Below the pieces are notes generated by a model that saw only the letters and a list, made by a program, of their open reading frames with translations, was not told the DNA's origin and did no database searches. Both the position numbers and the translations under genes were made by a program. Positions 9,501-30,949 of a stretch of 64,000 nucleotides of DNA are shown here, piece after piece. The DNA comes from Phallusia mammillata (Eukaryota): contig OZ281500.1 of the NCBI GenBank assembly GCA_965637545.1, positions 3,720,001-3,784,000 on the forward strand. The letters are read 5' to 3'. The first letter of the stretch is position 1. Every line of letters starts with the position of its first letter.

Positions 9501-10756
9501 GTTAGGCTACTAATCGCTAAAATTTCATACACTCAGTGTTTTTGGAAATTATTTCTGGACACAAATTTTATACCCAAAATACAAAATGTCTGGCAAACCT
9601 AGGTAGTATTTCTTGTATATTGGTAACACTTCTGTTGTTTGAAAATAGAAAGATATGTTTTATCGCAAGAGGAACATAGAACAGACCTTAACACAACCAA
9701 CTTACAAAACAACTACTTTCAACCTGTTTCCAGGATTCTCATAACAACTACAACATGACCCCTAGAGGACCAGATCGCCCCCTTCTACCTTCCACCACCA
9801 CTGATTATGTGATTGCTGATTTGAAAAGTGACGATAGCACCGATAATGAAGATGAACCAAAGAAACCAATCCCCACCTGGGCTAAAAGTATGACCTTTTT
9901 TCAAATCATATATTTCAAAGTGTTTTCTCTTCATGCTGATAAATACATATATAGCAGCGTTCTTAACCCTAGCTACAAGCTGTATTCTGGGGGCACAGGT
10001 GTAGGGTCACTAGGTACGCAAGCACTGCTCAATGTGTTGATGTAATGTTTATACTGTTCGTCGTTTTTAGCAGTAATTAATACTTATCCTTGTAAATTCT
10101 TGACTATAAGTGAGTTTTTCAGTTGCTTTTTTTAAAGAAGAGGGAGGGTCCTAAGAGGTTACTTAAGGGAGGGCTGGTCCTCAAGGTTAAGGGGGGACTT
10201 GTCCTGAAGTGGGCCATGCTCTATGAAGAACCACTGGTATATAGCATGGTACTTTAGAAGAGAAGTTGGCAACTCAGGTGACATGGCCAACTATAGAAAA
10301 ACTTGTATATCTTTAATGGTTTTGCAAGGTTTTTTGCGTCCCATATGTTATAGTATGCTATATGTTATATTTTTAGTACCACTATTTAATGAATAAGCAT
10401 TTTCGATGCTACTCAAAGTACATGAAAATTCATGCGGACCCCATTGTTTTTTCAGTGTCTGTTCGGTGCCGTAATTCCAATGTAGATAAAGTCATTGTAG
10501 GTACAAAAGCTTTCATAATGTTTGATTTTATTTTTTAGGTTCTGCCTTGAACTTGGCATTGATTCAACAGCACCATAATGACCTGTCATCAGCTGATGAA
10601 GTTTTTAAAGGATTACTTCAACCAGTCAGTCTCTCTGATCTCTTTCCCAACAAAATAAAGGCCCGTTATTTTAAGCGAACGAGCTCAGCGCATTGGACCT
10701 CTCCTATTCGACCTCCGGGGTATACAAGCTTCACCAGCCAATGTAAAGGATTTTAA
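522..10756 (+). CDS. INCENP: Inner centromere protein INCENP, 5'-truncated by the window edge; 18 coding exons seen
   Basis: Phase-consistent GT-AG exons: 522-630, 1007-1108, 1445-1527, 1940-1987, 3298-3492, 3902-4011, 4251-4431, 4776-4838, 5087-5163, 5355-5409, 6074-6235, 6823-6999, 7274-7330, 7600-7701, 8264-8338, 9147-9218, 9734-9887, 10539-10756(stop). Long E/R/K-rich single-alpha-helix region followed by the IN-box: DYVIADLKSDDSTDNEDEPKKPIPTWAKS...LSDLFPNKIKARYFKRTSSAHWTSP, matching the remembered vertebrate IN-box pattern (DLNSDDSTDDE..P.KPIPTWA...RY.KRTSSA.W.SP). Confidence 0.95.
2263..2571. mobile_element. hAT-type MITE (309 bp) in an INCENP intron
   Basis: TIRs TAGTGATGGGACGA / TCGTCCCATCACTA; 8-bp TSD ttaatcac / ttcatcac (7/8); subterminal CCGATAC/CCGAGTAC repeats. 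Confidence 0.85.
8586..9014. mobile_element. hAT-type MITE (429 bp) in an INCENP intron
   Basis: TIRs TAGTGATGCACCGAA / TTCGGTGCATCACTA; perfect 8-bp TSD gtacaaac (8578-8585, 9015-9022); many CCGAA/TTCGG subterminal motifs. Confidence 0.92.
9955..10236. mobile_element. hAT (Buster-like) MITE (282 bp) in an INCENP intron
   Basis: Ends CAGCGTTCTTAAC / GAAGAACCACTG; TSD atatatag / gtatatag (7/8). Confidence 0.7.
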
Positions 10757-11728
10757 TGCTGTACTTCAACCTAAATGTGTTTTAACCATCAAAGAGTTGT
10801 TTTACAAAAGGCAGTACCGCCAATTTTTTTTGACAAACTGTAAATTAGAGAATTGCTACTGTTACTGCAGCATGCTTAATATAATCATCACATGAATCTG
10901 CAGAAATGTCTTTGGTGAAAGCACGCTTGTGTGTTGCTCTGCATTTTTTCTATCTTGCTTCTGTTGGATGATAACATTTTAACTGTTTTTATTTTGTTTA
11001 TTTTAGTAAATAATTTTCAGTTCTGTGGTGATTTTTAGGCTACCCTATGTGGACCATGGTCTTTTAGTTAACAACTTACCTGTGTCAAAAATATGTCAGT
11101 AATTTATGAGTCAACTCACCTACTGAACTTTCATGTATTATGTTTTTTGGTCGCTTTTGTAAATAAACTTTCTTTGCATAAAAAGCTAACATTAAAGTAA
11201 TTTGTGAAGACCCCTATTCTCTCCTAAGAGTAACATTATCCAATTAATCTGGTAAGATCAGTATCAACTAAGAAAACAGTAACTTTTTCTAGAAAATAAC
11301 AAACCTGTCAATATTTTGCTCAATATGTTTTTTATGCTTCCTTTGTACCAGTGGGTCCCTAAGGGTCTGTGGATGGAAAAACTTAAAAATTCCACATCAT
11401 GTCAACTGTATATACCAGGGTCCCAAAATTTGGCACTTTTTTTGAAAAAGGTATAAAACCTACAAAAAGGTTAAAAAACAGATGCTTTTTTGAATCAAAT
11501 AAGCTGATATTTACCTTGCAAAACTGGCAACTTGCAAAAAGAAATGAATATAAGCACTGTTCTAATCAAAAAGTAAGCAATATGGTTGCAAAGTTGTGGC
11601 TCTGCAACTTCCAACATTAAACAAAATACCAACAAATCATGCATTCACTAAGAATGTTCTTACCAAATGCATCAACAACCACTTCCAAAATAACAAAAAA
11701 ATATAACACCAATTTTATAAAAACACTG

Positions 11729-11986
11729 TTATGTCGGAGATGAATCGCTGCTGCTTTCGGAGTCATTTTTAGGTTTGTCTTTAAATTCAAATTGAAGGTG
11801 TTTCAGATAAGGTGACTTGCTCAGTTCACGGACCTTATCGTAGCGCCCTTCTATGTCTAATTTCTTCATTTCCCGTAACAGTTGTGCCTCTTTAATGCTG
11901 GGGTAAGCTACATAGTAACTTGCCAGTAACCCACAGCCACCAGCTACAAGCATACGCAGTGTATGGGCGAATTCTTGACTTAGCAT
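11729..11986 (-). CDS. 85-aa single-pass membrane microprotein (PIGBOS1-like layout, unconfirmed)
   Basis: ATG-initiated ORF MLSQEFAHTLRMLVAGGCGLLASYYVAYPSIKEAQLLREMKKLDIEGRYDKVRELSKSP...; one hydrophobic segment followed by a charged tail; strong polypyrimidine acceptor (ttctttgttcttttccag) 14 nt upstream of the ATG; higher GC than flanks. Confidence 0.65.
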   Translation of the reverse strand: MLSQEFAHTLRMLVAGGCGLLASYYVAYPSIKEAQLLREMKKLDIEGRYDKVRELSKSPYLKHLQFEFKDKPKNDSESSSDSSPT

Positions 11987-12944
11987 TTGTGATTAATGCC
12001 CTGGAAAAGAACAAAGAATTGTTAACAACAGTTTTATGGCTACAACTGTGCGCTGAATGTCTTAAGAACAATACTTTGTTACAAACCATTAAGTATTATA
12101 TCCTAACACTGCAAGGGTTTGCAATATGTGGCCTGTGGGCCCAATTTAACCCATTAAATATAGGTTGTACAGGTTGCAGAGATGTTTGGATTTTAAATAA
12201 GGCATGGCCAACTTCTTGAATTTAACAGCCAAGTAACATTTGAACATATACAAAACGTTGTCGCAATACTTAACCTAACTGAAATATAAAAAACAGTGGC
12301 TGTCAAAACTGTCAATCCTACAGAATGACAAGGTGGCCACCCCTGCCCTATTCGATTGATCACAAAATAGAGAATCAATTTTCAAGTTGTAAATTTATGA
12401 TTGGGTTAGTCAGCCTTTAATATGTTACGTCGTTTAATCAAAACCGAGTGTATCATGTCGCATATTACTAATGTTTTTAAGCAAAAAATGGAAATAAAGT
12501 TATCATCCATTCTAGAAATCCTAAATGCGCAGTTCGGATTGGAATCGATTATAATGCAACCTTTTCTAAATAAAATAAAACATAAGTTTGATACTAAACA
12601 AACTTAATCAGCGAATTTTCTTGCTCAAAAAACAAACAATCTAGTAAGTTTTTTTGGCTTTCTTGAAAATCGGAAATCCCCCAAACCAAACACTAATAGA
12701 AAACATAAATATATATTTTCTAAGTGTGTTGAGGGCATAAACTTTAAAGCAGCAAAAAGTTTCAATATAGTTTAGATTCCGGCGATGAAATGTGCAATAT
12801 CAAACGGATTAAGAATGAGGCACAAATATTGATTTGAGCAACGAGGTTGTGAGAAACTTTTTTCACGGGCTTCGAACAGAAGCCGCCGACGGGGACGAAT
12901 CCCGATCAGGTTCTTTATGTTTGCATATTGATAAGGCATGCTTG

Positions 12945-13223
12945 CAGTGGCGTAGGCAGCCGAAAATTTTGGAAGGGGCCCAAATCATATGTTGTCCAGT
13001 ACCGATTTTTGCTAACGCTCGGCGTAAAGGCCATGTTTGCATAAATATATAAAAAGCATGGATTTTGTCTAACGACTTGGCGAAAACAGTCATCTTTGGT
13101 AAGTTATATATTCCTTTGACAGTTAAGAGACGAAACTACACTAAATTCAAGTTTCTTAATATACAACTTTAAAAATTTGGGAGGGGCCATGGCCCCTTTA
13201 ACCCCTTCCTGGCTACGCCACTG
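12945..13223. mobile_element. MITE (279 bp) with 8-bp TSD, hAT-like
   Basis: TIRs CAGTGGCGTAGGCAG / CTGGCTACGCCACTG (14/15); perfect TSD catgcttg (12937-12944, 13224-13231). Confidence 0.92.
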
Positions 13224-13429
13224 CATGCTTGTGTTTAGCACAGTTTGAAAACCCACAAACGAAAGCGTGGACACAAAATAAAAATGGAATCATTTTCAGG
13301 TTCAGATTATAACGGTATGTCTGCACTAGGCCTATCTGCAGTAGGCCTACTAAAAAAAATCTTTCGATGCTTTATCCCTTGTCCCGCATACCTTAATGCG
13401 TTTATCGAGCGGACGGTCGCACCTCCCAA

Positions 13430-14130
13430 ACACAAAGTGTGACGCTGACAGGCGGTCTCCGACAGCCGCTGTTACCAGCGAAGTTCAGTGTTAAATCCAA
13501 TGCGCCGAAGGTGGCGACTTGTACTTCGGTACCAAGTCGTCTTTACCGATGACGCCAGAAAACGAACAGCCGAGTGCCCGCTAGACGGTCGTGGGAAGAC
13601 GATGTCTAGTTGCAGTGATGGCTTTGCGTTGCGCGTGGGTAAGCGCTTGCCCGCGCAATTGCGACATTCCATCGCTTCGTTACCACCTTACGTCGCTGGA
13701 CGTACTTTTGTTTCCATGCATTCGCTCACGTGACAAAACGTTGTCTGTACGAACAATTGCAGCACATTCTCACAATCCTCAAACAGAAGTTGGTTTGCAG
13801 CATTTAAAATGGACATTTTTTCCTGTTCAATAAGCTTTGGGAGGTGAAATCTTGCTGATTCGGAACTCGACACGTCACTGCTTAGCGGGTGCTTCAGTAC
13901 ACAAGGTTTTCGTTGCACAAGTACCATGCTACGGACCAGCTCCGCTCCCTTGGGCGAAGGAGGGCGCAGTGCTGGGGCTAAGTGCTCCAGCATTGCTCCC
14001 CCTCTCTTCCTCAAGAAGCCGCCTAGCGGGATGCTTTTGCTCCCGCTGTGGATGGCTACTGTGAGTGGGCTTGGTATAAAAGAGCCGTGTGCCCTATTTT
14101 CATTTGTCTCATTTATTGATCACCTCTAGC
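13430..14130. other. GC/CpG-rich island without a convincing ORF (possible promoter, LTR relic or ncRNA)
   Basis: Three 60-nt lines counted (13441, 13921, 13981) are 55%, 67% and 58% GC against a visibly AT-rich background; hairpin AGCGGGA-tgcttttgc-TCCCGCT near 14025-14047; TATAAAA near 14074. Confidence 0.4.
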
Positions 14131-14356: not shown

Positions 14357-16990
14357 TCATTGTTTTGGAGCAAATACAGGACTTAACATTGCCTTAAGGC
14401 GAGACTCCGGATCGTAGTACGCGGACGGTGTGAGTTCATACGGCAACGATTCAGTTAAACTCAAACTATTCTCACTTTTCCGACAAAAAAAGACAAACGA
14501 GACAAATCTCTTGTCAACGCAGCAGTTTTCAAACAAGATCTGACACAACTTGACGCCACAATTGGCGACAGAAATACTCTCGCGGTATCTCATAGATTTG
14601 TGGAAACCTATAACCAGATCACAAAGAAAACCTACTCCATATTCAGCATAAAACACACTTTCAGTTAATTTTGCAAAGCCCAAAGCCTCTTTTGCGCAGA
14701 TGATAAGTTCAGTAGTCTGTGATTCCGGAAGCTCTCGAATTTTTCGTTGGTATTCAGTTAGGTGTGAAACTGTTTTTCTCTGGTTAGTAGTTGCGCCAGT
14801 AACGGTCAATTTCAATTTAGGAACAACCGTTTCCGCGTTTGTTGGAAACCGTTTGTCTGCACTGTTAACACACTCCTCTCGAAAACATTTCGATTTGATA
14901 AACCGTATATAATCCGTGGTTAAGTCCAAATCATCGTCAAGATGCATTTTTCTTCTCTCCGATAAAAGTTGGTCGCAAATATCTATTGCTTTCTTGTTTC
15001 TTCCCATTCTGTTGTGGTAAAGTGCGTTAAAACTCAATGAATCTGCATCAGTTAGACTTGATGATACACGGCGAAAATATTTCAAAGATTTTTTTAAACG
15101 ACCGATGCTTTCAAAGCAAACTCCCATAAAAAAGTATATTTCATCGCAAAAAGTCTCTTTACACCGTCCATCGTAGCAAGCAAAGTTTAATTTTCTGTTC
15201 CACTTTAGGGCCAGCTTGTATTTCTTCAAATTAAGCAACGCGAACGCATAGGTATTCACGCAACCAGCGTTTAAGCTTGATATTCCGTAGTCTTTGTGTG
15301 CGGTTTGATATCGCCTGTAATTTGCTACCACTGTTTCATGTTGTTCAAGCACAATCAAGCTCTGCAAACAGTACATCAGCAATATGATTCGGTTATGCGG
15401 GTCATTCTGAAACTCGAGTACATTTTGCAGCTGCAGAAATTTTTTTTCACAAATGAGTGCATTCTGAAGTATGATGCTACAGTAACTTTAAGTTTTTCAT
15501 CCACGCCGAACCGGACAAACGAGGGAATGTCTTTTACATCGTCGATCTCCGAAAATAGACCTTGAAATTGTCTTGCGACGACATAACTATCCACTATAGC
15601 TCCTTCACCAATAAAAGTGGACAGTTGTCGCATATTTTGACTTTTTTCTCCAAACTCATCAGCAGCAAAAATGTCTTTTTGGCCATCGTTGAGCAGACTT
15701 ACTCGAAGACGAATTTCGCACGCAACGGCAAGTGAAAAATTTATTTGATCTCTATCAATCTGTGAAAATACGCCTCTTTTCCATAACTCATTGACAATGT
15801 CGAAACATACTACTGCTTGTAACTGATACAAACGTCAAAGCGCCAAGACAGATAACGTTGGAGTTCTATAGATAGACCGTTTAATGTCAAACATTTTTTC
15901 ATTAAAATCGTTTTGCAGAATGCAGTTCTGAATATCACTTTTCAAAAGGTTCCAAGAGTCATTGGTAAGAGGTGATGCTCTGTTTAACACTGTCGTCTGG
16001 AAATGTTGGTACAAATCAGTACTTCCATGTATATAACATGTTTTTGTTAACATATCGGCCAAATGATATCCATTCTTTAAATCCTCTTCTGTGTCCAAGT
16101 ACTTTACCATCTCACTGACTGGTTTGATCAGCTCGACTGTTGTTTCCCAATGGATTCTTACTAGCTTGCGGAGCAAATCCATCAGGGCGAATTCCACATC
16201 TAGTGTGTGCATCATAAAACCAGTTTTCCTCATCATTTAAAGGATTATTTAGGCATGGAATAGCCAAGAAGCGAAGTACAGTTTCCCCTAGGCGAACTAA
16301 AATGACTTCAAACAATGTTGCAAACCATCGGAAATATTCCAGAATGTGTTCATAGTTTGGATACTGTTGAATTCCATCTTCCAGCACAATAATGCTTTCA
16401 AAATCAGAATATGGAGTTATTTCTTTTCTGGCTATTGAACCCATTCCTATCAAAGCAAACTGACAAGGTACGGGCTCCCCCATTATGTGAACGGTGTAGT
16501 TTGCAATGCGGTTCATTAGGTATTTATATGTAACTGTAACATAAGCCTGTATTTCTCGCACTTCTGAAATTCTTTGTATTCTTTCTTTATTTAGTACTTC
16601 GGCATGCTGGAAGTCATCTAACATTGGTTTCAACTTTAGAACTTTATCTTGAGTAACTTTCCGATACTGTTGAATCTCACACTTTATTTCAGCAACAGCC
16701 TTGTCTATCAGTTCTGTATTTGGTTGTTTGCATTTAGCCAGAGTCATAATATGTTTACACACGTCGTCTAGATCCTCAGTGACTTGATTCTCATTAAAAG
16801 GATGACGTAGAGCAGCCGACGTCATCAAAGCAACACTTTGAATGAGACTGATCTTATCTGGACTTTTCTCTTTGTACACAAGCCCCAACTGATGCAAAGT
16901 TTTTGCTGATTCTTTTGGTTTGATTTCTTCTCCATATGAGCACTGCTGTTTTAACTTTTGTACCAAGGTTTTTTCTCGAGAATTAGCCAT
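14357..16990 (-). pseudogene. Disabled intronless paralog of the DUF294-type nucleotidyltransferase-TPR gene
   Basis: Four listed ORF fragments are colinear with the 874-aa + strand protein from MANSREKTL to TPSAYYDP. Lesions: net 26-nt deletion/frameshift after SKNPLG (about 16137-16146), GGA>TGA nonsense (15835-15837), and a 1-nt loss in an A8 run (15440-15447). ATG at 16990 shares the CAAATCATGGCT context with the intact copy. Confidence 0.9.
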
Positions 16991-18571
16991 GATTTGACTG
17001 TCAAAAGCTTCACTTAAAGTCAACATAAACTATGTAACTTCACATCCAATTGATTTATTTTCCTGTTACTGTACAGTTTACCTTCGCAAAAAGCGATGAA
17101 GCGCCCGTTTACAGCTCAAGTTTCAGCTTGGCAAAGCCTACACCAGGCGTTGGTAACCTTTAGAGTTTAGAACGTTGGCAACTGCGTGTCAACTTACTTT
17201 TTTGTCAAAAAAGCATTGGCTTCGCCTTCCAACATTTTGTGTAAAAGTTATTAGTGCCATCAGATTTGAAATGTATTATTGGATTGTAGTTTCCACTAAA
17301 CGCAGCAAAACTAAAGTATACTTTACAAATGGGAAGGATCATTTGAAGTGCGACAGGCTAAAGTTTAAATAATGAAATAACTGACAAATCGTGGCTCAAA
17401 CTTTCTCAACAGCTGGTATGTTTACCTAACAAGATTTATTTAAAACAATATTATTACCATAACCTTATACACTAATCATTGTGTAATATTGTGCCACTGC
17501 CATAATTATTTTTAGTCACACTTTACACTTAATGTAAAAACAAAGTATACGCGAACAGGTTTCATGCCAGGTACAAAGCGAACATCGTACAACACCTCCT
17601 GGTAGTACGCGAGTAAAAAGATGAATTGTTCTTTGTATTATACAGTATTTGTATACTTCCGTCAAATCGCGCATTAGAAAACTTTGGAACCAACATGGAC
17701 AGCGCAGTTTAAACGTCCCCTGCACAGCACCAAACGTGGTACTTTCCCAGACATTGTTTTGACAAGGGGTAAAACCCTAATGCGTGCCGCAAAGAACAGG
17801 AACTGGTTGATCGAGACTTAACTTTCGCCACAATTTGGCTGCGCAACTTATCATACAGTCAGTGTGGTTATGTAGACCAAGGAACAACATACCATTGTGA
17901 CTTTAGTTAAATGAACGAGATAAATAATGTAATTACAGAAAAAGTTACTTTCAATCAAGTTTTAGTTATGCGGCATCAGAGGAAAAATTGACAATGAACA
18001 GTCTATATTTTTATACTGGGCTTTTTCCCATATTACCAACAACTTCAAATGTTCTTGAGATTGCCAATAAAGGAAGGAAACTGTTGCCATATTATGATTG
18101 TAAAGCGACACCAAAAAGCAAGCAGTTGTATATGACGGTCACCACGCATACCACCATGGGTTCGAAAGAGGAAAAAAACATAAAGATATCGAGAAGACTA
18201 CACATGTCAGTGGTTCTTAACAAAGTGTAAAACAGGTCTAAAAACAGAAGGCGTTGACATAAACTGTCATTTTTCCGAATCTAGATCAGTTTATATTCCT
18301 AGTGTACATAAATGCTACCGATCTGCTTTGAATTATTATTATTAGCCCAATTTATTTAACATTCTAAAGCAGTGGTTTTCAACCTGGTATTCGCAGATGC
18401 AGAATAAAAGAGTTTACAATTATAATAAGTAGTCGTTACATTGTCACAAGAAAGATAAGAACCATTGATCACTGACCCAAAATTATACCGTCGTAACAAA
18501 CTGTCGCATTACAAACATGTTTTGACCGTTTTTTTTATGCAGGGTGTATTTTATAAAGACCAATACAAATC

Positions 18572-21196
18572 ATGGCTACTACCCGAGAAACTAAGCTGGT
18601 AGAAATGTTAAAGCGACAATGCTTACATGGAAGGGAAATCAATCCAAAAGAATCAGCAAAAACTTTGCATCAGTTGGGACTTGTGTACAAAGAGAAAAGT
18701 CCAGATAAGATCAGTCTCATTCAAAGTGTTGCTTTAATGACGTCGGCTGCTCTACGTCAGCCTGATAATGTGAATGACGTCACTAAAGATCTTGATGACG
18801 TGTGTGTGCATATGATGGCTCTAGCTAAATCCAAACAAACGAATGCGGAACTGATAAGCAAAACTATTGCCGAAATGAAAAACAAAATTGATCTATTTCG
18901 CAAAAACACAAAAAGTAAGGTTGAAAAACTAAAACCAATATCTGACGACATGGAAGGAGATCTACTTTTGGAAGAAAGAAGACACAGAGTTGAAGAAGTG
19001 CGAGATATACAGAACTATGTTACTGAAGCATACAAAGATATAATGAGTCATATTGCTAACTCTACTGTTCAAATAATGGGTAACCCACCTTGCAAATTTG
19101 CTTTGATAGGAATGGGTTCATTAGCCAGAAAAGAAATAACTCCATATTCTGATCTTGAAAGCATTATTGTTTTAGAAGAAGGAATTCAACAACGTCCAAA
19201 CAATGAACACATTCTGGATTACTTCCAATGGTTTGCAACGTTGTTTCAAGTTATTTTAGTTCGTATAGGAGAAACAATTCTTCGCTTCTTGGCTATTCCA
19301 TGTCTCAACAACCCTTTGAATAAAGAAGACAACTGGTTTTATGATGCATACACTCCATGCGGAATTTGTCCTGATGGATTTGCACCACAAGCGAGTAAAA
19401 ACCCATTGGGAAGACAAACAAAGACACAGAACAAGCCGTGGACAACTGAGCTGATCAAACCAGTCAGTGAGATGGTGAAGTACTTGGATACTGAAGAAGA
19501 TTTAAAAAACGGATATCATTTAGCAGATATGTTGACCAAAACCTGTTTTGTCTACGGAAATGCTGAATTGTATAAACAATTCGAGTCACAAGTCTCAGCA
19601 GCAATAAATAAATCACCAAACAATACTGAAAGGATTTGGAAAGAATTAGACGCTGACCTTCAAACGTTTGACTTCGAAAAATTCTTCAACAGTGTTGATT
19701 TTGACATTAAACGGGTCATCTACAGAACATCGACGTTGTTCGTACAAGCCCTTGGACGTTTGTACCAATCACAAGCAGTTGGGTGTTTTGATGTTGTTGA
19801 AGATTTGTATAGGAGAAGTGTGATATCCAACTTTGACAAGGAGCAGTTGCAGTTCTCACTTGCCATTGCGTGTGAAATTCGTCTTCGCGTTTGTTTGAAT
19901 GAACGAAGTCAAAACGATATCACAGTTGCAGGAAACTCAGTAGAAAAACCTGGAAAACTTCACCAATACTCGGAGTCATTTGGGGAAGAAGCTATAGTTG
20001 ATTGTCATAATATCGCATGGGCTTTGGAATTATGGCTCGATCGATGCTTTAAATCTAAACAAGTTCCCCTTCAGTGTCAGCTACCGGTGACGCAGATGGC
20101 AAAAATGTTGGCCGCTATGAAGCTAGAGATGCATTCGTGTGTAGAAAAGATATTCGTGCAACGAATTTCTATTTTAGAATCAGAAGAAAGGGAGTACCTA
20201 GTCTGGTATACTGCCATATCCTTGTGGTGCTTGGAAAAGTCTGGAAAGTACAATGACGTACTCGCACGGTACAAAAAGTATCAATACGTAATACGGAAAT
20301 GTAAAGACATAGGAATCGCCACGCATTGCATACACGCCTATGCAAACGCACTGGTGCAATTAAAAAAATATAAGCAAGCTTTGAAGATTCTGAAAAAGAT
20401 TCATTTTCGTCTATTTAGCGGCCAATGTACGTACGACACAATTGATTCGATATATCTTCAAATTGGGATGTGCTATGAGGCGATGGGACGTAACAAAAAA
20501 GCTTCGAAGTATTTCGATCGAGCCCAAAACAAAACATGCGAACCCAACTATTTCAGTACATCAATGAACTTAGCTGAACAATTCAATTCTTTGGAAAGGT
20601 TTAGAGAATCAGTAGAAACTTGCGAAAAATTGTTATTAGCCAGAAGAAAATTACATCTTGATGAAGACAATGATGTAACTTCTCAAATGATTTTGTTGAT
20701 GAAAAGTGACAGTTTACAAGGACGTTCCAGGAACTATTTAAAAGGTATGGCAAAGTTCTCTGCGAAGGAGTTAAGGGTATTGCGATATGCTGAGGAACAT
20801 CTCTCTCAATATAAACGATGTCTCGCCAATCTTAATTTCGACAATTCTGTTATTCATGCCAAAAAAGGTCTGAATTTCGCATTTCAAACAAATAGCAAAG
20901 GACTACAAACGGCAATTCACCTCATATTCTATGTGTCCTACAGTCTTTACCAATTGGGGAGACTATTTGACAGTTGTTTAGCCGCTGCCAAAGGTATAAA
21001 ATTATGCCTGAACCTTTACGAAAACTGCTCCGACAAAGTACTTTTTGCGATGCTTGTTCAGCATTTTCAGGCGTGCGAGCGGGATTTGAACCGCGAACCC
21101 TCTTATCCGTACTTGTGTACCCCTTCGATGTTTTTTGACCCAACGACACGCAGTTCCCAATTGCGACAATTTAAAAATGTGGAATCAAAGTTGTGA
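18572..21196 (+). CDS. 874-aa intronless protein: N-terminal helical/TPR-like region, Pol-beta-superfamily nucleotidyltransferase (DUF294 / GlnD-N type), DUF294_C-like helical bundle, C-terminal TPR repeats
   Basis: Single 2625-nt ORF. Motif FALIGMGSLARKEITPYSDLE (G182-S183, D194, E196) fits hG[GS]x9-13Dh[DE]; candidate third acid D268 (CPDGF); DIKRVIYR...ALGRLY...IACEIRLR helical module (about aa 378-440); TPR-like helices YANALVQLKKYKQALKIL, IYLQIGMCYEAMGRNKKASKYF, LAEQFNSLERFRESVETCEKLL, YSLYQLGRLFDSCLAAAKGIKL. Confidence 0.9.
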   Translation: MATTRETKLVEMLKRQCLHGREINPKESAKTLHQLGLVYKEKSPDKISLIQSVALMTSAALRQPDNVNDVTKDLDDVCVHMMALAKSKQTNAELISKTIAEMKNKIDLFRKNTKSKVEKLKPISDDMEGDLLLEERRHRVEEVRDIQNYVTEAYKDIMSHIANSTVQIMGNPPCKFALIGMGSLARKEITPYSDLESIIVLEEGIQQRPNNEHILDYFQWFATLFQVILVRIGETILRFLAIPCLNNPLNKEDNWFYDAYTPCGICPDGFAPQASKNPLGRQTKTQNKPWTTELIKPVSEMVKYLDTEEDLKNGYHLADMLTKTCFVYGNAELYKQFESQVSAAINKSPNNTERIWKELDADLQTFDFEKFFNSVDFDIKRVIYRTSTLFVQALGRLYQSQAVGCFDVVEDLYRRSVISNFDKEQLQFSLAIACEIRLRVCLNERSQNDITVAGNSVEKPGKLHQYSESFGEEAIVDCHNIAWALELWLDRCFKSKQVPLQCQLPVTQMAKMLAAMKLEMHSCVEKIFVQRISILESEEREYLVWYTAISLWCLEKSGKYNDVLARYKKYQYVIRKCKDIGIATHCIHAYANALVQLKKYKQALKILKKIHFRLFSGQCTYDTIDSIYLQIGMCYEAMGRNKKASKYFDRAQNKTCEPNYFSTSMNLAEQFNSLERFRESVETCEKLLLARRKLHLDEDNDVTSQMILLMKSDSLQGRSRNYLKGMAKFSAKELRVLRYAEEHLSQYKRCLANLNFDNSVIHAKKGLNFAFQTNSKGLQTAIHLIFYVSYSLYQLGRLFDSCLAAAKGIKLCLNLYENCSDKVLFAMLVQHFQACERDLNREPSYPYLCTPSMFFDPTTRSSQLRQFKNVESKL

Positions 21197-22606
21197 AAAC
21201 ATCCACAGTTAATTATGTATTGAGCAATGTATTGAGTCATACAACAGTCTCACTCCGTCCAGCAATAAGGCGTGTTATTTCTACCTCACTGACAAACTGT
21301 AGTGACATATACGGGGGATAAACTATTTTTATTAAAAACAATATTGCTAAGCTTATGTACAGTGTACATATTATATTATGAATACAGTGTACGTATTCCA
21401 AAGTTTTCACTGCCCAAGTTCTCAAGTCTCAGACATTTTTTTATCAAGCTGCTTTTTTCGTCCGTATAGTGTTCGTAAGCATTTATTGATAAAAGTAAAA
21501 CGACCAAACAAATTTTTTTTTTGATGAAGTTGAATTTCATATTTTTACTGTTTACTTGTGGCATTGTTGCACTTAATGATGTTTTTTTAAATAACGTGTT
21601 CATTCCCCGCGACTTTTTCCTTACTTGAAAATTCGAATTTGATTTTAAGTAACAGTATTGAAAGGTAAAACTTAAAAACACTTCTTAGCAATACCCATTA
21701 GTTCATAACTGCAAGAAAAAATCTAAAAAATCTAAGAATCTTCCAACCCGTGAATAAAACGAGTAAAACATGGGAAAACGAAACGTTTTTGTAAGTAACA
21801 TCACCAATTCTCCGCCAAACGACCATTCATTTTCGTCTTTCCCCAATTGTTTGTTTTCATACAATTGATATCCAGGAAATTATCAGGAAGTCGTCAGTGG
21901 CGAACATTTCGTAATACAGTGTTTTTAGGCTGCACTGGGTTAAATGGCAAAGTAGAAAGGTAAAACAACAAATTAAACCATGTAGTTTTTGTATTCACAG
22001 CACAACTAAACGCCGCGATCGACCTATTGATCAACAGACCTATTTACCTACTTGTGTTATTGTTTTGATCGAGGCTAGGTAAAGAGCTTCGTTGTATTCC
22101 CCATTCAAAGGAACGTTAAAAGAAGTTATTGTGAGAGAAACGTCCCCAACCGTGTACCCTTTGTGTGACTTACGCCGTTCAAAACTCATCAATTGTAGCC
22201 GAAAGAATGGAGTGTTGAATATAAATACCAAAATGCTTTGCACTTAACCGAACTTAATTTTGGATGTTTCCAAACTAATACGTAATTTTTTATTAGCAAA
22301 GTGATATTGTTGTATACGTAATGGCAATTAATTAGTTTTATAAAAACTATCGGCATATTTTCTTGGTATCACGAATGGAAACGTGCTGTCACTAAACGAA
22401 TGCGGGGGATAAGACCCACCCGTTTCCTCGATAACAAAAGCGAGTAAGACGATCAGCATATACAAAGCATATGTTAGTTGTAGCCACAGCAGCGTGCAGA
22501 ATAATAAGGAAGCAAATTATCAGTCTTAGCGTGAATTGTTGTGTTTTACAAAGGTTAAAGCTGAACTACAATGCAAATGCAAGATTTTTACGCAAATAAA
22601 TAGATT

Positions 22607-24489
22607 ATGGCCACTGAGGCGAAGAAAAGATTCGCCATACTAATTGGATTTGCTATTTTCTTCTTTATTGTTAATCAGGTAGAAATCAACCCAAAGACAA
22701 GGTTACCAAGGTAAGCCTTGTAAAACATTATGCAATATGTGTATACCATTGCAGAAACATCTGAATTCAGTGTAAATGCTTTATGCTATTACAACTTAAA
22801 TTCTTTTTTCGAAGTTACCTCGTGTTAATGTATTGTGTACCGAAATATACAAGCATGCTTTGCTACTAAATTTCTTCATAAATGCACATGCTTAGTGTAA
22901 TACAAGAAAGGCTAACAAACACAGCAGAGTTATAATCTCGGGCCTGTTCATTTTTTTATGCTGTAGAGAAGCTACATCAGCAACGCCGGTACACAAAGTA
23001 CTGCCAAACGTTAGCACAACACCATATATGCAGCAAAATACAACGACAAACGATACTACCTACGAAAGAACTCCGTTTAAATACCTCATACAACCGAGTT
23101 TCAACTCCAACTATGGTTGCAACTTGGAAAAATGCCTTAAAGGCAAAGGTATGTATTTGTAAGGTTTAGTTTTTCTGAAAAGCTAAAGACGTACATTGAA
23201 TATTATGTTATCAATAGAAATTCGTTGGAAAATGACAATCTTTATCAAGTCAGCTGCGGCCAACTTTCAACGGCGCGATTTTCTCCGTCGCACGTGGGCG
23301 TCCTTGCGCTACATTGCCGGTGGTCGGATTGAAACAGTTTTTGTTTGCGGGAGTACAGAAGGAAGCAGTTACTTGCTACTGACAGAGGAAAGCAAACGCA
23401 ATGGTGACATACTGCAGTTCGAGGGCCCTGACGACTACAGGTACTCCCACTGTATGCCTTAAAAACTAACCATACTAGCCAAAGCAACACCAAAGGCGAA
23501 AGTATAACAGCTGCAACAGCACAGTTGAATCAGTGTAGAGCTTAACAGCTTAACGTTAATATCGATTTCGCCAAATATAACATGGCTTAATTAGTCCTAA
23601 TCAGGAAATAATTCAAGTCATAAAATAATAAAAAGAACATAAAATAACGCCAGAGTTAGACACCAAAGGATGCGCCCTAGCTTGAAAAAAGCTTAATGCA
23701 AGGCCAATTTGCAAATTCATTTTGCAAACACCATGGTGTTAACAGTAGGTGGACATACTTTTGACTATTTCCACGTTGAAACATAACGCCCAGTTGACCT
23801 TACAAAAGTCAAACAATTGTAAGGCACGAAAAATGGCAACCGCTTATGTGTAAGTTGGACTATATATGTCTCATGACAAAATTAATAAGTGACGATATCA
23901 TATACTTTGTTTTGATAGCAACATCGCCCTGAAGACGTTGGCAGGAATGCAGTGGGCGGCGGATAATTTGTCACCGACTGACCTTTATTCGTCGGGCGAT
24001 GACGATTTTTTAATCAATGTCGGTCAGTTGCAAGACGTGGTTGACAAAGCGGCGGCATCAGTAAAGAAACAAAACTGGCCCGAATTTCCCATACTTTGTG
24101 TATACAACACACTACAGCACGCGAGTCCGTACAGGGACATAAAGGGAATTTACAACAAGTGGTATATCACAACTGAGGAATACAAATGGCCTTTCTACCC
24201 ACGGGCCTGTTTTGGGGGGTTCTATACAACGAGCGTGAGTGTGGTGGCGCAGCTGTATGAACAGTCAAGGACGGAACCCCATCTACGCGTTGACGACGTT
24301 TGGATAACCGGAATCTTGCGAATGAAAATTGGGATGCCTGAGGATATGGTGATGGAGAGTAAAGCGAAAATCGCTCAGCATTTGGTGGGTTATAAAAAAA
24401 AGACGGCCAAAACGAGACGCGACTTCTTATGGAAGGATTGGGAAAAAATTACGCGAACTTTTAGACAAAAAGTCAAATGTTTTTGTTGA
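22607..24489 (+). CDS. GT31 family beta-1,3-galactosyl/GlcNAc-transferase-like type II membrane protein (359 aa, 4 exons)
   Basis: Exons 22607-22710, 22967-23148, 23218-23440, 23919-24489, all phase-consistent. N-terminal TM (FAILIGFAIFFFIV), FKYLIQP, IKSAAANFQRRDFLRRTW, DDYSNIALKT, GDDDFLIN, PRACFGGFY, DDVWITG. Confidence 0.92.
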
Positions 24490-26437: not shown

Positions 26438-28348
26438 ATGCTACCGTTTCTACTGCGTTTTTGCCTACGCGTTACTGCACACAAACGCTTTAATCGGTAA
26501 CACGTCCGTTGTTGTCATGCGCTAACCGTTGTTTTTTTTTTCAACATCAAGTTTTGCTTCAAGCAACACCAACTTCGACAAAGATTTTTAGCGCAAACCA
26601 CTGTAGGTTTTACACAGCTTGCGGTACAGTTCAATCTACCGACAAAATCATTTTTTGCGTTTTCAACATATATATTTCGAAACCTTACCCAAAGTGGGCT
26701 ACACCACGTTTCCATTGTTATAACCCGCCCTGAGAACACGAGTTATCTAAAAATGGAACTATACGCTTTGTTTTAGGGCTGCTTGTAACCTTGAGGAACG
26801 TCTTCTACGATTTATGTCACCCACTCGACCAACGGTCTTGGTTCTCAGTAAAACGTCATTTGAATTTACAAAAACACCAAACATTTCGAATGTTACTTGT
26901 TCTGGCCTAAATGAGTGTCTCAAAAAACAAGGTTGGTACTTAAATGAAAACAAACAAACAAACAAATAATTGAGTCATTTTGAAGATGAAACAATTGTTT
27001 GACTCTATGTACGTACAAAACGACTGTAGTGAATAATATAGTAATGTTAATGGATGTTGTACAATAACATGTTTTAAAAATACCTCAGACGACAGTTGGG
27101 AGTCAGTAAACACCCAGATTATGGGACTACAAGGATAATGTGAAACATGCTCATACATATATCTAACATGATAAACTTCTAATTTACAGACGTAAAGTGG
27201 CGATTGGTTGCTATTGTGAAGTCTCCACCAGGAAACTTTCAACGCAGAAATAAAATCAGAAATTCGTGGGGTTCGCTGCGTTTCATGTACGAAGGTAGAT
27301 TGGACGTCGTGTTTCTGATGGGGAAAGAGCGTTCTGATGAATCCAAACGATTACAGAAGGAACATGATTTAAACGAAGATCTGCTGCAATTTAATAATGA
27401 CGATGCGGTTAAGTAAGTACGTTATGCTTAAAAAAGGGTTGAGTCAAACTGGTGGGTTTCAAGCTTACTTTGCCTGTGTATTACTATAGTAAGTAAGTGT
27501 AACGGTGTACATACATAAGGTCGGGTTCGGGCGCGTCCTAATATTACTTCTAATTGCGAAAACGTTGCTGGGATTTCGTTGTTACCGCACCGACGGCAGT
27601 TTTCTTAATTCCAATTCCGTGGACTCAAATAAAGCCATGAGTTCATAACAATGGAGTTGAGTCCATAAACTGTTATGCGGAGGCACAAAATGATCTGAGA
27701 CCTAAAATGGTGATGAGCTCCCCCAAAAAATAATACTCTTGTTTCAGAAATGTGCCTGTGAAGTCGCTGGCAGAACTACAGTGGGCATCTGCCAATCTTG
27801 ACGACCACCGCTTTATTCTCTCCACTCATGACAACGTCAAACTGAACCCAATCGAATTACTAAACTACACCAAAGCTACAATGCACAAAATGCGGAAAAA
27901 CAAATGGCCTGAATTCCCATTGGTGTGCCCGTACAACCAACTTAAGACATTGCGCGTAAGCAGAAACAAATCAAGCGACTGGTACGCCGCTGTGGAACAT
28001 TTCCAATGGTTGTTTTATCCACCCGCATGCACTGGTGGCACGTATTTGATCAGTGCAGGTGTGGCAAAACTACTTTACACAGAATCACGCAACATTTTAA
28101 GCGTAAGAAAAGGCAACATTTATGTCACAGGACTGCTGCGACGGCAAATTGGCATGCCAGACAAAATGATGCTAGAAGCACCAGAGAATGTAATTTTGGA
28201 TTCTGAGGTGTATACAACCCCCACAAACACATCAAGAAAGTTCAACAAGTTTTGGGCTCAAACTTTGGGGTTACTAAGCAAAGTACCTCAATGCATATGT
28301 AATCCAAACGATGTTTTAAACAAAGAAGATGTTTTGGGGAAGGGTTAG
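26438..28348 (+). CDS. Second GT31-like gene (tandem paralog) with degenerate catalytic motifs; first coding exon uncertain
   Basis: Exons 26777-26931, 27190-27412 (223 nt, same length as the paralog's exon 3) and 27748-28348 with the same intron phases as the upstream gene; KSPPGNFQRRNKIRNSW, KWPEFPLVC, YPPACTGGTY. Exon 1 candidate 26438-26496 (phase 2) lacks a good TM, so the start is low confidence. Confidence 0.8.
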
Positions 28349-29366: not shown

Positions 29367-30949
29367 TATTATACCATCAAAAACAAACCTTTGTAGTCCA
29401 TAGATTACTCATCGACATTGTGGTCCATGGATTATGCTTTGTTGTTTCTGTATTTGTATCAACTCTCTGTGTTGCTGTGGAGATCCTAGATTTAAGCACA
29501 TAAACAACCAAATTTACACTTGCATCACCAAGAGAATATTTACATTGACAGTTAGAAGTTAAATACATATTTTCATTTCACAACACACATATGCTGGTGT
29601 GGTATGCAACACAACATAGCTTTTGTGTATCCCACAGACCTTTGAACGAATAAATAAATTATGCAGCTAAATGTATTTTCATGTATTTTGTTTGGAAAAT
29701 ATTTTAGCTAATCTGGGTCATTTTTTAATGATCATCACACCAATTATGTTAACATTATTTCAGAAATATTGTTACAAGCTATTGCCATAATAATATCAAC
29801 CAATGTGGAAATTACTGATGGTAACAATAAATTGATGAAAGTTGTACATTGTCAACAAAACATCAGCCAAAATATCCCGATTATTTCATCAGCAGAGGTA
29901 GGTAACCATTTAAATGGAATTAGTTTGAATGTACGACTATGTATTTAGTTTTATTTAAACGAAAGTAAAGCACTATAAGCACGAAAGGTATACCTTTCTG
30001 CTTTCTTTAAATGTTTTGAAGTTGTCTTCAAGTTCCCAACGTCACATGCCCATCCATTTGTATTCTCGTTGTGTAGGTGTCTTTATCTTTTTTTCTTCTT
30101 TTCTTTCAATCAGCATGCTTCAACTAAATCCAATTATTTACGGCATTTTCTCATAACTTCAAAATAAAAAAGTTCCTAAAGTTTTCTGCAAAACAAAAAT
30201 TTGTTGATAAATTTGCCGCCAAAAATCTTCACAATGGTTCAGCCATTCTGACTGCTCAACAGCGGAAACTTATCCTCGGTTTATTGCACAAACGTTGATT
30301 GTTGTTTAAAGAAAAATAATTAAAAATAGCTAATTTAGGATAGAACATGCTAATTTTACCAACCTTAGGCAAAAATAATATTTTTTTATCTCTCGTCACA
30401 CTTGGATTTATATTCGGCATGGTCTACTGGTTTTGTCACACGTGATTGACTACACAAGTGTTGTTAGTTGCAATGGTGGGATTCCAAAATAAACCGCGAC
30501 AGTCTGACCTCATGAACGTCAGGCAATGGCTGTTTTTTTCTTTATTTGCGTTGCAAGTAATTGGATAATATAAGGGAGTTTTTCCAAGTGTATTAAATTG
30601 GATTTTTTCTGGCAGGTTTTTTTTACCTAAATTGGCCATCGTTAAATTAGTAGAAGATTTCATGCAGATGCAAACAGAAAGTGTTTTCACTGGAATGCAA
30701 ATAGAAAGTAAACAATTGCATAGGGTAACTTGCAGTTTTACAGCGCTAACTTGCAGTTGAGGCTGTAAAGTAAAAACAGATGTATTTATTGCGGTTATGA
30801 CTAAAACAGTATTTGACTTAATCCTAAATTTAAAAACATTTTTAGTTGCAATGCACAAAACTGAAAAAAAATTGTTTATGCAATTTAATAAAAGGATAAA
30901 AGAATACAGAAAGTTAGATGTTTGTATGGTGAGGTAGGGTTTGAACAAA

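What the first reader, a model, noticed from the sequence alone, without database searches (positions are those of the whole stretch)
18572..21196. Animal DUF294/GlnD-type nucleotidyltransferase fused to TPR repeats: candidate sensor-coupled NMPylation or second-messenger system
Seen: an 874-aa ORF with an intact Pol-beta NTase signature (GMGS-LARKEITPY-SDLE; G182/S183/D194/E196, probable third acid D268), then a DIK..IYR...EIRLR helical bundle like the substrate-binding domain that follows DUF294/GlnE-type NTases, then at least four TPR-like units. Established: this NTase clade (GlnD, GlnE, DUF294, MNT antitoxins) is mainly prokaryotic and transfers NMP to proteins, while other animal Pol-beta NTases (OAS, cGAS-like receptors) are innate-immune sensors. 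Inference: a TPR ligand-binding half on a bacterial-type NTase, duplicated and diversifying, fits a sensor-effector immune or stress protein that AMPylates/UMPylates targets or makes a nucleotide signal. I know of no characterised function for this architecture in animals.
Basis: partly seen in the sequence, partly recalled or inferred. Interest (0 to 1): 0.85.

Follow-up and report, generated by a model that had tools for sequence, protein, structure and literature searches.

The report
Sea-squirt-type protein-tagging enzyme with TPR arm
This is an intact, probably transcribed, intron-free animal gene from a very large, unstudied invertebrate family that joins a bacterial-style protein-nucleotidylating enzyme (the fold of GlnE and Legionella DrrA) to a TPR binding arm; what it does is still only inferred, and the scan has already met this family elsewhere in this genome.

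Summary
Window 18572-21196 (+) is an uninterrupted 874-aa ORF. It scores above Pfam's cut-offs for DUF294 (45.6 bits against 21) and TPR_12.

The predicted structure of residues 1-500 (pLDDT 90) matches the AMPylation domain of Legionella DrrA (Z 25.3) and both halves of E. coli GlnE (Z 20.4 and 19.4). It does not match cGAS, OAS or CD-NTases. Residues 505-840 are a generic TPR solenoid.

The gene belongs to a tunicate-type clade (28 Clavelina and 4 Ciona proteins among the top 120 hits). More distant relatives are in amphioxus, octocorals and intracellular bacteria (Holosporaceae, Parachlamydiaceae).

Contigs from four probably-RNA runs cover only the 3' half of the ORF and stop about 150 nt after the stop codon, next to an ATTAAA signal.

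An inverted neighbour (14357-17026, minus strand) is a frameshifted paralogue.

Most likely this is an active protein NMP-transferase whose TPR arm picks the target or ligand. An immune role and second-messenger synthesis are unsupported.

The scan has already found this family at eight or more other places in this genome. I rate it a new variant of a known kind, of moderate interest.

The parts
18572..21196 (+). Intact single-exon ORF, 874 aa: NTase-TPR protein
   Evidence: ORF list. Homologues start and end at equivalent positions. Pfam DUF294 and TPR_12 are above cut-off.
18572..18850 (+). N-terminal TPR-like cap of about two repeats (aa 1-93)
   Evidence: Model residues 1-93 match the KLC2, LGN and Ctr9 TPRs at Z 8.0-8.6, which is only a middling Z for helical repeats.
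18848..19078 (+). Two long helices leading into the NTase core (aa 93-169), shared with DrrA and GlnE
   Evidence: Secondary structure H93-118 and H129-169. This stretch lies inside the aligned ranges 49-499 (DrrA) and 90-491 (GlnE).
19079..19561 (+). Pol-beta nucleotidyltransferase core (aa 170-330)
   Evidence: Pfam DUF294. Fold matches to DrrA (Z 25.3) and GlnE (Z 20.4 and 19.4).
19115..19159 (+). Catalytic motif G182-S183 ... D194-x-E196 (G-x11-D-x-E)
   Evidence: G182, S193, D194 and E196 are invariant in 71 sequences. The same motif is present in amphioxus, octocoral, Holosporaceae and Parachlamydiaceae relatives.
19373..19375 (+). D268, the probable third metal-binding acid
   Evidence: Invariant column. 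It sits in the conserved G-x-x-F-D-G motif shared with the bacterial relatives.
19562..20071 (+). Helical bundle after the NTase (aa 331-500), DUF294_C / HEPN-like, with invariant K380, R385 and R437
   Evidence: Pfam DUF294_C is detected in 30 of 71 family members but not in this copy. Residues 343-499 match the HEPN-type protein YutE (1ylm) at Z 7.3. Invariant residues.
20084..21085 (+). C-terminal TPR solenoid (aa 505-838); confidently modelled to about aa 720, less so beyond
   Evidence: Full-length model. Residues 505-640 superpose on designed consensus TPRs at rmsd 2.1-2.5, and LGN, Rap, KLC and OGT match at Z 12-14. Pfam TPR_12 covers aa 587-651.
21197..21348 (+). Probable 3' UTR, with an ATTAAA signal at 21331-21336
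   Evidence: Contigs of runs X7, X9 and X10 end at 21290-21348 and nothing is laid beyond that point. Sequence read.
18530..18542 (+). Pyrimidine tract followed by CAG, 29 nt before the ATG: a possible splice or trans-splice acceptor (inference only)
   Evidence: Sequence read. No read evidence covers it.
14357..17026 (-). Inverted (head-to-head) paralogue, broken by two frameshifts; only a 304-aa N-terminal ORF remains open
   Evidence: tblastn finds three pieces in frames -1, -2 and -1 at 71%, 49% and 32% identity. There is a net 26-nt deletion opposite focal 19412-19441, and a second shift lies near an A8 run at about 15440.

Best explanation
The ORF encodes a cytosolic, catalytically competent nucleotidyltransferase of the GlnE/DrrA/DUF294 fold. 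By analogy with every characterised enzyme of that fold, it most likely transfers an NMP (AMP or UMP) from an NTP onto a hydroxyl side chain of a target protein. Shown here: the gene is intact. The fold and the metal- and NTP-binding residues (G182/S183 loop, D194, E196, D268) are conserved, as are three basic residues in the following helical bundle. The enzyme half has evolved under purifying selection. The copy appears to be transcribed. Inferred: the substrate is a protein. The C-terminal TPR solenoid, helped by the small N-terminal TPR cap, recruits the target or binds a regulating ligand. The many paralogues with divergent TPR arms address different partners. The gene is one member of a tunicate-type expansion of a family shared with amphioxus, octocorals and intracellular bacteria.
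For: The ORF is intact and its start and end are conserved with homologues. Pfam DUF294 and TPR_12 score above cut-off. There are 23 invariant columns, including all catalytic acids, across 71 sequences. The AF2 model has pLDDT 90.2 and pTM 0.91. Foldseek gives GlnE 1v4a at E 1e-7, DrrA 6yx5_B at E 1.4e-7 and GlnE 3k7d at E 6e-7. VIA gives DrrA Z 25.3 (322 of 339 residues, rmsd 3.8) and GlnE Z 20.4 and 19.4, with the next NTases (ANT, AadA, KNTase) at only about Z 7.5. In the ESM Atlas the nearest non-family folds are bacterial sensor-coupled DUF294+DUF294_C proteins. DUF294_C is found in 30 of 71 family members and SidM_N in 32 of 71. dN/dS against the neighbouring paralogue is 0.17 over the NTase core. 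Zero-mismatch contigs from four probably-RNA runs are confined to 19918-21348; none lies in the flanks or on the broken paralogue. The family is large: 857 representatives at 50% identity with E<=1e-30.
Against: No activity, substrate or nucleotide preference is known for any member of this family or for any DUF294 protein I could find. Sequence identity to DrrA and GlnE is only 11-14%, and their Pfam and NCBIfam models score below cut-off, so the chemistry is inferred from fold alone. The same fold includes a deadenylylating (phosphorolytic) domain, the GlnE N-terminal half, which matches as well as the adenylylating half does. The RNA label of the runs is a guess by the tool and depth is low (about 4-6). 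TPR arms also occur in non-enzymatic scaffolds. The C-terminal 150 residues are poorly modelled.
Confidence: 0.5

Rival explanations
1. The enzyme nucleotidylates a small molecule or a nucleic-acid end (as the aminoglycoside NTases ANT, AadA and KNTase do, or as a tailing enzyme does), and the TPR arm acts as a scaffold.
For: ANT(4'), AadA, AAD(9) and KNTase share the two-domain layout of NTase plus helical bundle and match residues 149-499 at Z 7.2-7.7. The Pol-beta signature itself does not specify the acceptor.
Against: These matches are far weaker than DrrA and GlnE (Z 19-25) and have rmsd 6.5-7. The long helices before the core are shared only with DrrA and GlnE. TPRs typically bind peptides or proteins.
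Confidence: 0.12
2. The enzyme is a sensor-activated synthase of a nucleotide second messenger, working like cGAS, OAS or CD-NTases.
For: It has a Pol-beta NTase core, is fused to a potential ligand-binding repeat arm, and belongs to an expanded family, as animal cGLRs do. This is an analogy only.
Against: No cGAS, OAS, Mab21 or CD-NTase structure appears among the fold matches. There is no Pfam hit to those families. PADLOC gives only a weak 43-residue motif hit. No characterised member of the GlnE/DrrA/DUF294 clade makes such a signal (established knowledge).
Confidence: 0.06
3. The enzyme removes NMP groups (phosphorolytic de-AMPylation, like the N-terminal half of GlnE) or switches between adding and removing them.
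For: The deadenylylating GlnE domain 1v4a matches as well (Z 20.4) as the adenylylating domain 3k7d (Z 19.4).
Against: The best match by a clear margin is DrrA, a dedicated AMP-transferase (Z 25.3). There is a single NTase domain, so no paired writer and eraser as in GlnE.
Confidence: 0.08
4. This copy is a non-catalytic binder, or a copy on its way to decay, in a family that throws off many pseudogenes.
For: The adjacent paralogue is frameshifted. Earlier notes of the scan report mostly broken copies in other arrays (not checked here). The apparent expression level is low.
Against: All 23 family-invariant residues are retained. The 874-codon ORF is open. dN/dS is 0.17-0.42. Contigs of this exact copy appear in four probably-RNA runs while none covers the broken neighbour.
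Confidence: 0.1
5. The sequence is bacterial contamination, or a very recent bacterial insertion, rather than an animal gene.
For: It has no introns and a bacterial-type domain, and there are relatives in Holosporaceae and Parachlamydiaceae.
Against: GC content is 36-37%, like the rest of the gene-poor window. The flanking ORFs are animal-type galactosyltransferase ORFs. A diverged paralogue lies next to it. The nearest relatives are tunicate proteins, in a clade separated from the bacterial ones by a long, fully supported branch. The bacterial relative is only 26% identical. The stretch is held by DNA runs from four studies of the same organism.
Confidence: 0.02

Closest known systems
Legionella pneumophila DrrA/SidM AMPylation domain (PDB 6yx5, 3nku)
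   Same: It is the best structural match: Z 25.3, 322 of 339 residues aligned, rmsd 3.8. It shares the G-x11-[DE]-x-[DE] motif and has the same long helices, NTase core and helical bundle.
   Different: Sequence identity is only 13-14%, and Pfam SidM_N scores 17.4 bits against a cut-off of 27. DrrA carries a Rab-GEF and a PI4P-binding domain rather than TPRs. It is a secreted bacterial effector, not an animal gene family.
E. coli glutamine synthetase adenylyltransferase GlnE (PDB 1v4a, 3k7d) and the PII uridylyltransferase GlnD
   Same: Same fold for the NTase plus helical domain (Z 20.4 and 19.4). Databases name the animal proteins after the GlnD N-terminal domain.
   Different: NCBIfam GlnE and GlnD equivalog models score 12-20 bits against cut-offs of 487-799. 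There is no tandem NTase pair (GlnE) and there are no HD or ACT domains (GlnD). The hmm of this family does not detect GlnE at all.
Bacterial DUF294 + DUF294_C signal-transduction proteins (CBS-, cNMP- or Cache-coupled)
   Same: Pfam DUF294 is above cut-off. The Atlas fold search gives TM 0.56-0.59 over residues 96-500. Both follow the logic of a sensor domain joined to an NTase.
   Different: Their sensor domains are N-terminal small-molecule binders, not a C-terminal TPR arm. Their function is itself uncharacterised.
DUF294-TPR proteins of intracellular bacteria: the Neochlamydia NEX2 family (PMC4209131), Parachlamydiaceae MAG proteins, Holosporaceae 'Namur'
   Same: Same order of domains, DUF294 NTase then a TPR array. 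The catalytic motifs are nearly the same. They too are expanded into large paralogous families. The NTase module is 26% identical between the window's family and the Holosporaceae protein. That protein is 33-38% identical to amphioxus, octocoral and Parachlamydiaceae proteins.
   Different: NEX2 proteins usually carry an N-terminal F-box (some an OTU domain), and some bacterial relatives carry ankyrin or methyltransferase modules. None of these is present here. The tunicate-type clade is separated from them by a long branch. Their function is also unknown.
Animal Pol-beta NTase immune sensors (cGAS/cGLR, OAS)
   Same: They share the Pol-beta superfamily catalytic signature, and both are lineage-specific expansions in invertebrates.
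   Different: They belong to a different clade of the superfamily. No fold or profile match was found, and the product chemistry is different.

Membership tests
Pol-beta nucleotidyltransferase superfamily | The hG[GS]-x9-13-[DE]h[DE]h motif plus a third acidic residue on a later strand, within an alpha-beta-alpha-beta-alpha-beta core | tested here: met
   G182-S183, D194-x-E196 and D268 are all invariant or nearly so. The model shows strands 176-181 and 195-201 flanking the motif. The fold matches NTases only.
Pfam DUF294 (PF03445) | Score above the gathering threshold of the family model | tested here: met
   45.6 bits against a cut-off of 21, residues 138-233. 70 of 71 aligned homologues also hit.
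Pfam DUF294_C (PF10335) substrate-binding domain | A profile match after the NTase core, with a helical-bundle fold | tested here: inconclusive
   This copy has no hit at E<=1, but 30 of 71 family members do (best E 1.1e-5). Residues 343-499 form a helical bundle that matches the HEPN-type protein 1ylm at Z 7.3.
GlnE (glutamine synthetase adenylyltransferase) | The equivalog model score, with two tandem NTase modules | tested here: not met
   NF008292 scores 15 bits against 487, and Pfam GlnE 16.4 bits against 24. There is a single NTase module. Only the fold is shared.
GlnD (PII uridylyltransferase) | The equivalog model score, with HD and ACT domains after the NTase | tested here: not met
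   TIGR01693 scores 12 bits against 519. There are no HD or ACT Pfam hits.
DrrA/SidM AMPylation domain | A Pfam SidM_N match, and AMPylation of Rab GTPases | tested here: not met
   SidM_N scores 17.4 bits against 27, although the fold match is Z 25.3. The activity cannot be tested with these tools.
TPR repeat proteins | A TPR profile above threshold and a helix-turn-helix solenoid | tested here: met
   TPR_12 scores 32.9 bits against 30.1. Residues 505-640 superpose on consensus TPR designs at rmsd 2.1-2.5.
Neochlamydia NEX2-type effectors | An N-terminal F-box, a mid-protein DUF294 and C-terminal TPRs | tested here: not met
   DUF294 and TPR are present, but there is no F-box or OTU hit. The N-terminus is a TPR-like cap instead.
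cGAS / OAS / CD-NTase signalling synthases | A Mab21, OAS or CD-NTase fold and profile | tested here: not met
   None appears among the Pfam hits at E<=1 or among the Foldseek and VIA matches.
Protein NMP-transferase (by function) | Covalent transfer of AMP or UMP to a protein side chain | not testable with these tools
   Inferred from fold only.

The most novel reading that the evidence does not exclude
The family is an undescribed animal sensor-effector system. Each paralogue's fast-diverging TPR arm recognises a microbial or self ligand and thereby directs or unleashes a DrrA-like AMPylase on a host or pathogen protein. That would be a third kind of animal protein AMPylator besides Fic (FICD) and SelO. 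It would share ancestry, through gene exchange, with effector-like DUF294-TPR families of intracellular bacteria.
Probability: 0.2. Interest if true: 0.85.

Novelty: new variant of a known kind. Interest (0 to 1): 0.55.

Why it matters
Protein AMPylation in animals is so far attributed to Fic-domain (FICD) and SelO enzymes (my own knowledge). The GlnE/DrrA-type enzymes are regarded as bacterial regulators or toxins. A family of hundreds of such enzymes in invertebrate chordates and octocorals, each carrying a different TPR arm, would be a large unexplored layer of post-translational signalling or host-microbe conflict. The family also has close counterparts in obligate intracellular bacteria. 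This locus offers an intact, apparently expressed copy that could be cloned directly from genomic DNA, because it has no introns.

Tried and rejected
1. A profile search of A1 against PDB sequences found nothing significant. The best hits were coiled-coil noise, and DrrA came in at E about 0.6. Only fold comparison links the protein to solved structures.

2. I tried E. coli GlnE as an outgroup. The family HMM does not detect it and hmmalign leaves it unaligned. The tree is therefore unrooted and I make no claim about the direction of transfer.

3. I tested whether bacteria are nested inside the animal sequences, which would imply several transfers. The quick tree interleaves them. However, the AU test does not reject a single split between the 46 named or presumed animal rows and the 4 named bacterial rows (p 0.49), so I dropped the claim.

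4. The genome-contig scan returned only one bacterial locus. The pattern-based search is too narrow to measure how widespread the family is in bacteria.

5. Literature searches on DUF294, PF03445, metazoa, tetratricopeptide, uridylyltransferase and amphioxus found no study of the animal family. Several 'DUF294' hits appear to be other DUF numbers picked up by prefix matching; the one I opened had no whole-word match.

6. The sigma-70 promoter scan of the intergenic region is irrelevant for an animal gene and I ignored it.

7. I considered dN/dS for the TPR half against the paralogue. I rejected it because at 32% amino-acid identity synonymous sites are saturated, and the partner is a pseudogene.

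8. Read laying allowed only one call, so population variation in the DNA runs was not examined.
Full report
**Observation.** Window 18572-21196 (+) is a single open reading frame of 874 codons with an ATG start. The window has no N runs. GC content is 32-42% across the window and about 37% around the gene.

I aligned residues 1-500 with 70 database homologues (alignment A1). Twenty-three columns are invariant, among them G182, S193, D194, E196, D268, K380, R385 and R437. S183 is conserved in at least 90% of sequences. The spacing G182-x11-D194-x-E196 is the classic Pol-beta nucleotidyltransferase signature.

Pfam places residues 138-233 in DUF294 (45.6 bits, cut-off 21) and residues 587-651 in TPR_12 (32.9 bits, cut-off 30.1). 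SidM_N and GlnE give sub-threshold hits over the same NTase stretch.

**Structure.** AlphaFold2 on A1 gave a confident model of residues 1-500 (pLDDT 90.2, pTM 0.91).

- Foldseek against the PDB returned only four significant chains: both halves of E. coli GlnE and the AMPylation domain of Legionella DrrA.
- Re-alignment with VIA-align gave DrrA 6yx5_B at Z 25.3 (322 of 339 residues, rmsd 3.8, model residues 49-499). The GlnE N-terminal domain scored Z 20.4 and the GlnE C-terminal domain Z 19.4.
- The next nucleotidyltransferases (ANT, AadA, AAD(9), KNTase) reach only about Z 7.5 at rmsd above 6.
- Residues 343-499 resemble a HEPN-type bundle (1ylm, Z 7.3). Residues 1-93 look like two TPR units (Z 8.0-8.6, middling for helices).
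- No cGAS, OAS or CD-NTase structure appears in either list.
- In the ESM Atlas, apart from the protein's own family (TM 0.93), the nearest folds are bacterial DUF294+DUF294_C proteins coupled to CBS, cNMP or Cache sensors, and GlnE (TM 0.56-0.63).
- Across the 71 aligned family members, 70 hit DUF294, 32 hit SidM_N and 30 hit DUF294_C. This copy itself does not reach DUF294_C.

The full-length model (pLDDT 82.3, pTM 0.76) shows about 16 helices between residues 508 and 838. Confidence is low for residues 722-775 and 846-874. Residues 505-640 superpose on designed consensus TPRs at rmsd 2.1-2.5, and LGN, Rap, KLC and OGT TPR domains score Z 12-14.

The architecture is therefore: TPR-like cap, then long helices, then NTase core, then a helical substrate-binding bundle, then a TPR solenoid.

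**Family and distribution.** The word-indexed search found 884 hits among the 8000 candidates it scored. The best are only 40-42% identical. The named ones among the top 120 are 28 Clavelina lepadiformis and 4 Ciona intestinalis proteins, either 'uncharacterized' or named by UniRef after the GlnD N-terminal domain. Conservation is concentrated in residues 1-490; the TPR half aligns poorly or not at all.

An exhaustive profile search counted 2466 cluster representatives at 50% identity with E<=1e-3, and 857 with E<=1e-30.

The closest relatives (P0001-P0007) lie on metagenome contigs that are gene-poor. One carries a Pao retrotransposon fragment. They are evidently host eukaryotic DNA, and the genes there are also single-exon.

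A scan of bacterial and archaeal genomes recovered one locus, in Holosporaceae bacterium 'Namur'. It encodes a 1295-aa protein with DUF294 followed by TPR_12/TPR_10. I searched with that protein's NTase region. It is 33-38% identical to dozens of Branchiostoma proteins, to octocoral proteins (Dendronephthya, Paramuricea, Xenia) and to Parachlamydiaceae MAG proteins.

One unnamed relative sits on a gene-dense contig with Pirin and shikimate kinase genes and a second, ankyrin-bearing paralogue, so it is bacterial.

The only paper I found on this architecture describes the Neochlamydia NEX2 expansion: 50 proteins, with F-box, DUF294 and TPR (PMC4209131). The catalytic motifs are almost identical between the animal and bacterial members.

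**Tree.** I built a tree of 67 NTase modules over 405 columns.

- The window's protein falls in a fully supported tunicate-type clade: 26 rows, SH-aLRT 100, stem length 1.45.
- Within it, the protein groups with the metagenome-eukaryote proteins (8 rows, support 98).
- Amphioxus, octocoral and bacterial sequences lie on the other side of the stem.
- The tree is unrooted, because GlnE could not be aligned.
- The quick tree interleaves bacteria with one octocoral group. However, an AU test does not reject a single split between animals and the named bacteria (p 0.49).
- I therefore make no claim about the number or direction of transfers.

**The neighbour.** tblastn finds exactly one other copy in the window, on the minus strand at 14399-16990. 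It comes in three pieces in frames -1, -2 and -1, at 71%, 49% and 32% identity.

The first frame change is a net 26-nt deletion opposite focal 19412-19441. The second lies near an A8 run at about 15440. Only a 304-aa N-terminal ORF stays open, so this copy is most likely a pseudogene.

Nucleotide similarity between the two copies runs from 6 nt before the ATG to about codon 440, at 74.7% identity, and is absent upstream. It is mosaic. The tract 18644-18735 has one mismatch in 92 nt, and 19122-19153 is identical. Synonymous divergence ranges from 0.32 to 1.17 between segments. That pattern suggests short gene-conversion tracts.

dN/dS is 0.42 for aa 1-90, 0.27 for aa 91-170 and 0.17 for aa 171-278, the NTase core. 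Most of the divergence therefore accumulated under purifying selection, strongest on the enzyme.

**Expression.** DNA-type runs from four studies of the same coded organism hold 83-97% of the ORF's sampled words.

Four small runs from one further study, which the tool guesses to be RNA, hold 6-32%. When laid on 15900-21899, their contigs match with zero mismatches only between 19918 and 21348. A single A>T difference lies at 21301. Two short one-mismatch pieces in the conserved region 19334-19444 probably come from paralogues. Nothing is laid on the intergenic region, on the broken paralogue's first piece, or beyond 21348.

An ATTAAA signal sits at 21331-21336.

Coverage restricted to the copy-specific 3' half plus about 150 nt of trailer is what a 3'-biased poly(A) library would give, and is not what genomic DNA would give. 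The RNA label is unconfirmed and depth is low, so I treat transcription as probable rather than shown.

A pyrimidine tract followed by CAG ends 29 nt before the ATG (18530-18542). It could be a splice or trans-splice acceptor, but this is untested.

**Mechanism.**

*Shown:* the gene is intact, the catalytic constellation is conserved, the fold is GlnE/DrrA-type, the enzyme half is under selection, and a TPR arm is present.

*Established knowledge:* every characterised enzyme with this particular fold adds or removes NMP on a protein tyrosine. These are GlnE on glutamine synthetase, GlnD on PII and DrrA on Rab1.

*Inferred:*
- This protein binds Mg-NTP through D194, E196 and D268 and the G182-S183 loop.
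- The invariant basic residues K380, R385 and R437 of the bundle contribute to binding.
- The enzyme transfers NMP to a protein brought in, or gated, by the TPR solenoid.

Paralogues keep the enzyme and vary the arm. This fits a family with one chemistry and many partners.

An immune or conflict role is a reasonable guess. It rests on the expansion, the turnover of copies and the kinship with effector-like families of intracellular bacteria. Nothing here tests it.

The second-messenger idea is disfavoured by the fold results and by the lack of any profile match.

**Membership.** The protein is a member of Pfam DUF294 and of the TPR class. It is not a member of the GlnE, GlnD or SidM families by their own score cut-offs. 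It lacks the F-box that defines NEX2. It probably works like DrrA or GlnE, but it is not one of them.

**Novelty and score.** Automatic annotation already labels the family in Branchiostoma, Clavelina, Ciona and octocorals. The scan has reported the family at eight or more other places in this genome, several of them followed up with the same fold assignment. I found no functional study.

This locus adds an intact and probably expressed copy next to a decayed one. I rate it a new variant of a known kind, with interest 0.55. The family is worth an experiment, but this report establishes no function.

Noticed in passing
window 18644-18735 and 19122-19153 versus the minus-strand copy near 16918-16827 and 16440-16409: There are near-identical nucleotide tracts (1 mismatch in 92 nt, and 32 of 32) inside an alignment that is otherwise about 75% identical. 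dS varies from 0.32 to 1.17 between segments. This looks like short gene-conversion tracts between the inverted paralogues and agrees with the separate first-stage note s1-355975.
   Followed up: partly
window 23938-24489 (+) and 27752-28348 (+): Two ORFs of 183 and 198 aa both match Pfam Galactosyl_T (beta-1,3-galactosyltransferase type; 51.8 and 37.5 bits against a cut-off of 23). They are probably tandem duplicate genes or exons, and ordinary animal neighbours.
   Followed up: partly
L005:2563-6447 (Holosporaceae bacterium 'Namur') and L007:4886-9742 / 10001-13564 (unnamed bacterial contig): Intracellular-type bacteria carry paralogous DUF294-TPR proteins. One has added ankyrin repeats. A second Holosporaceae paralogue (P0268) lies on the same 22-kb contig. 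Their catalytic motifs are nearly identical to the animal ones.
   Followed up: partly
window 18530-18542: A run of T followed by ATGCAG ends 29 nt upstream of the start codon. It looks like a 3' splice or spliced-leader acceptor. No read evidence was available.
   Followed up: no
proteins P0151 (3112 aa), P0152 (2060 aa), P0153 (1560 aa, Branchiostoma lanceolatum): The top profile hits contain three to five separate matches to the NTase module in one predicted protein. These are either true multi-NTase fusions or tandem genes merged by gene prediction.
   Followed up: no
window 18833-18887: There is a 24-nt tandem repeat of 2.3 copies (75% matches) inside the coding region, around aa 88-105, in the poorly conserved linker between the N-terminal cap and the long helices.
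   Followed up: no
window 37711-38490 (-) and 30436-30960 (-): ORFs of 259 and 174 aa have no Pfam match at E<=0.01. They were not examined further.
   Followed up: no
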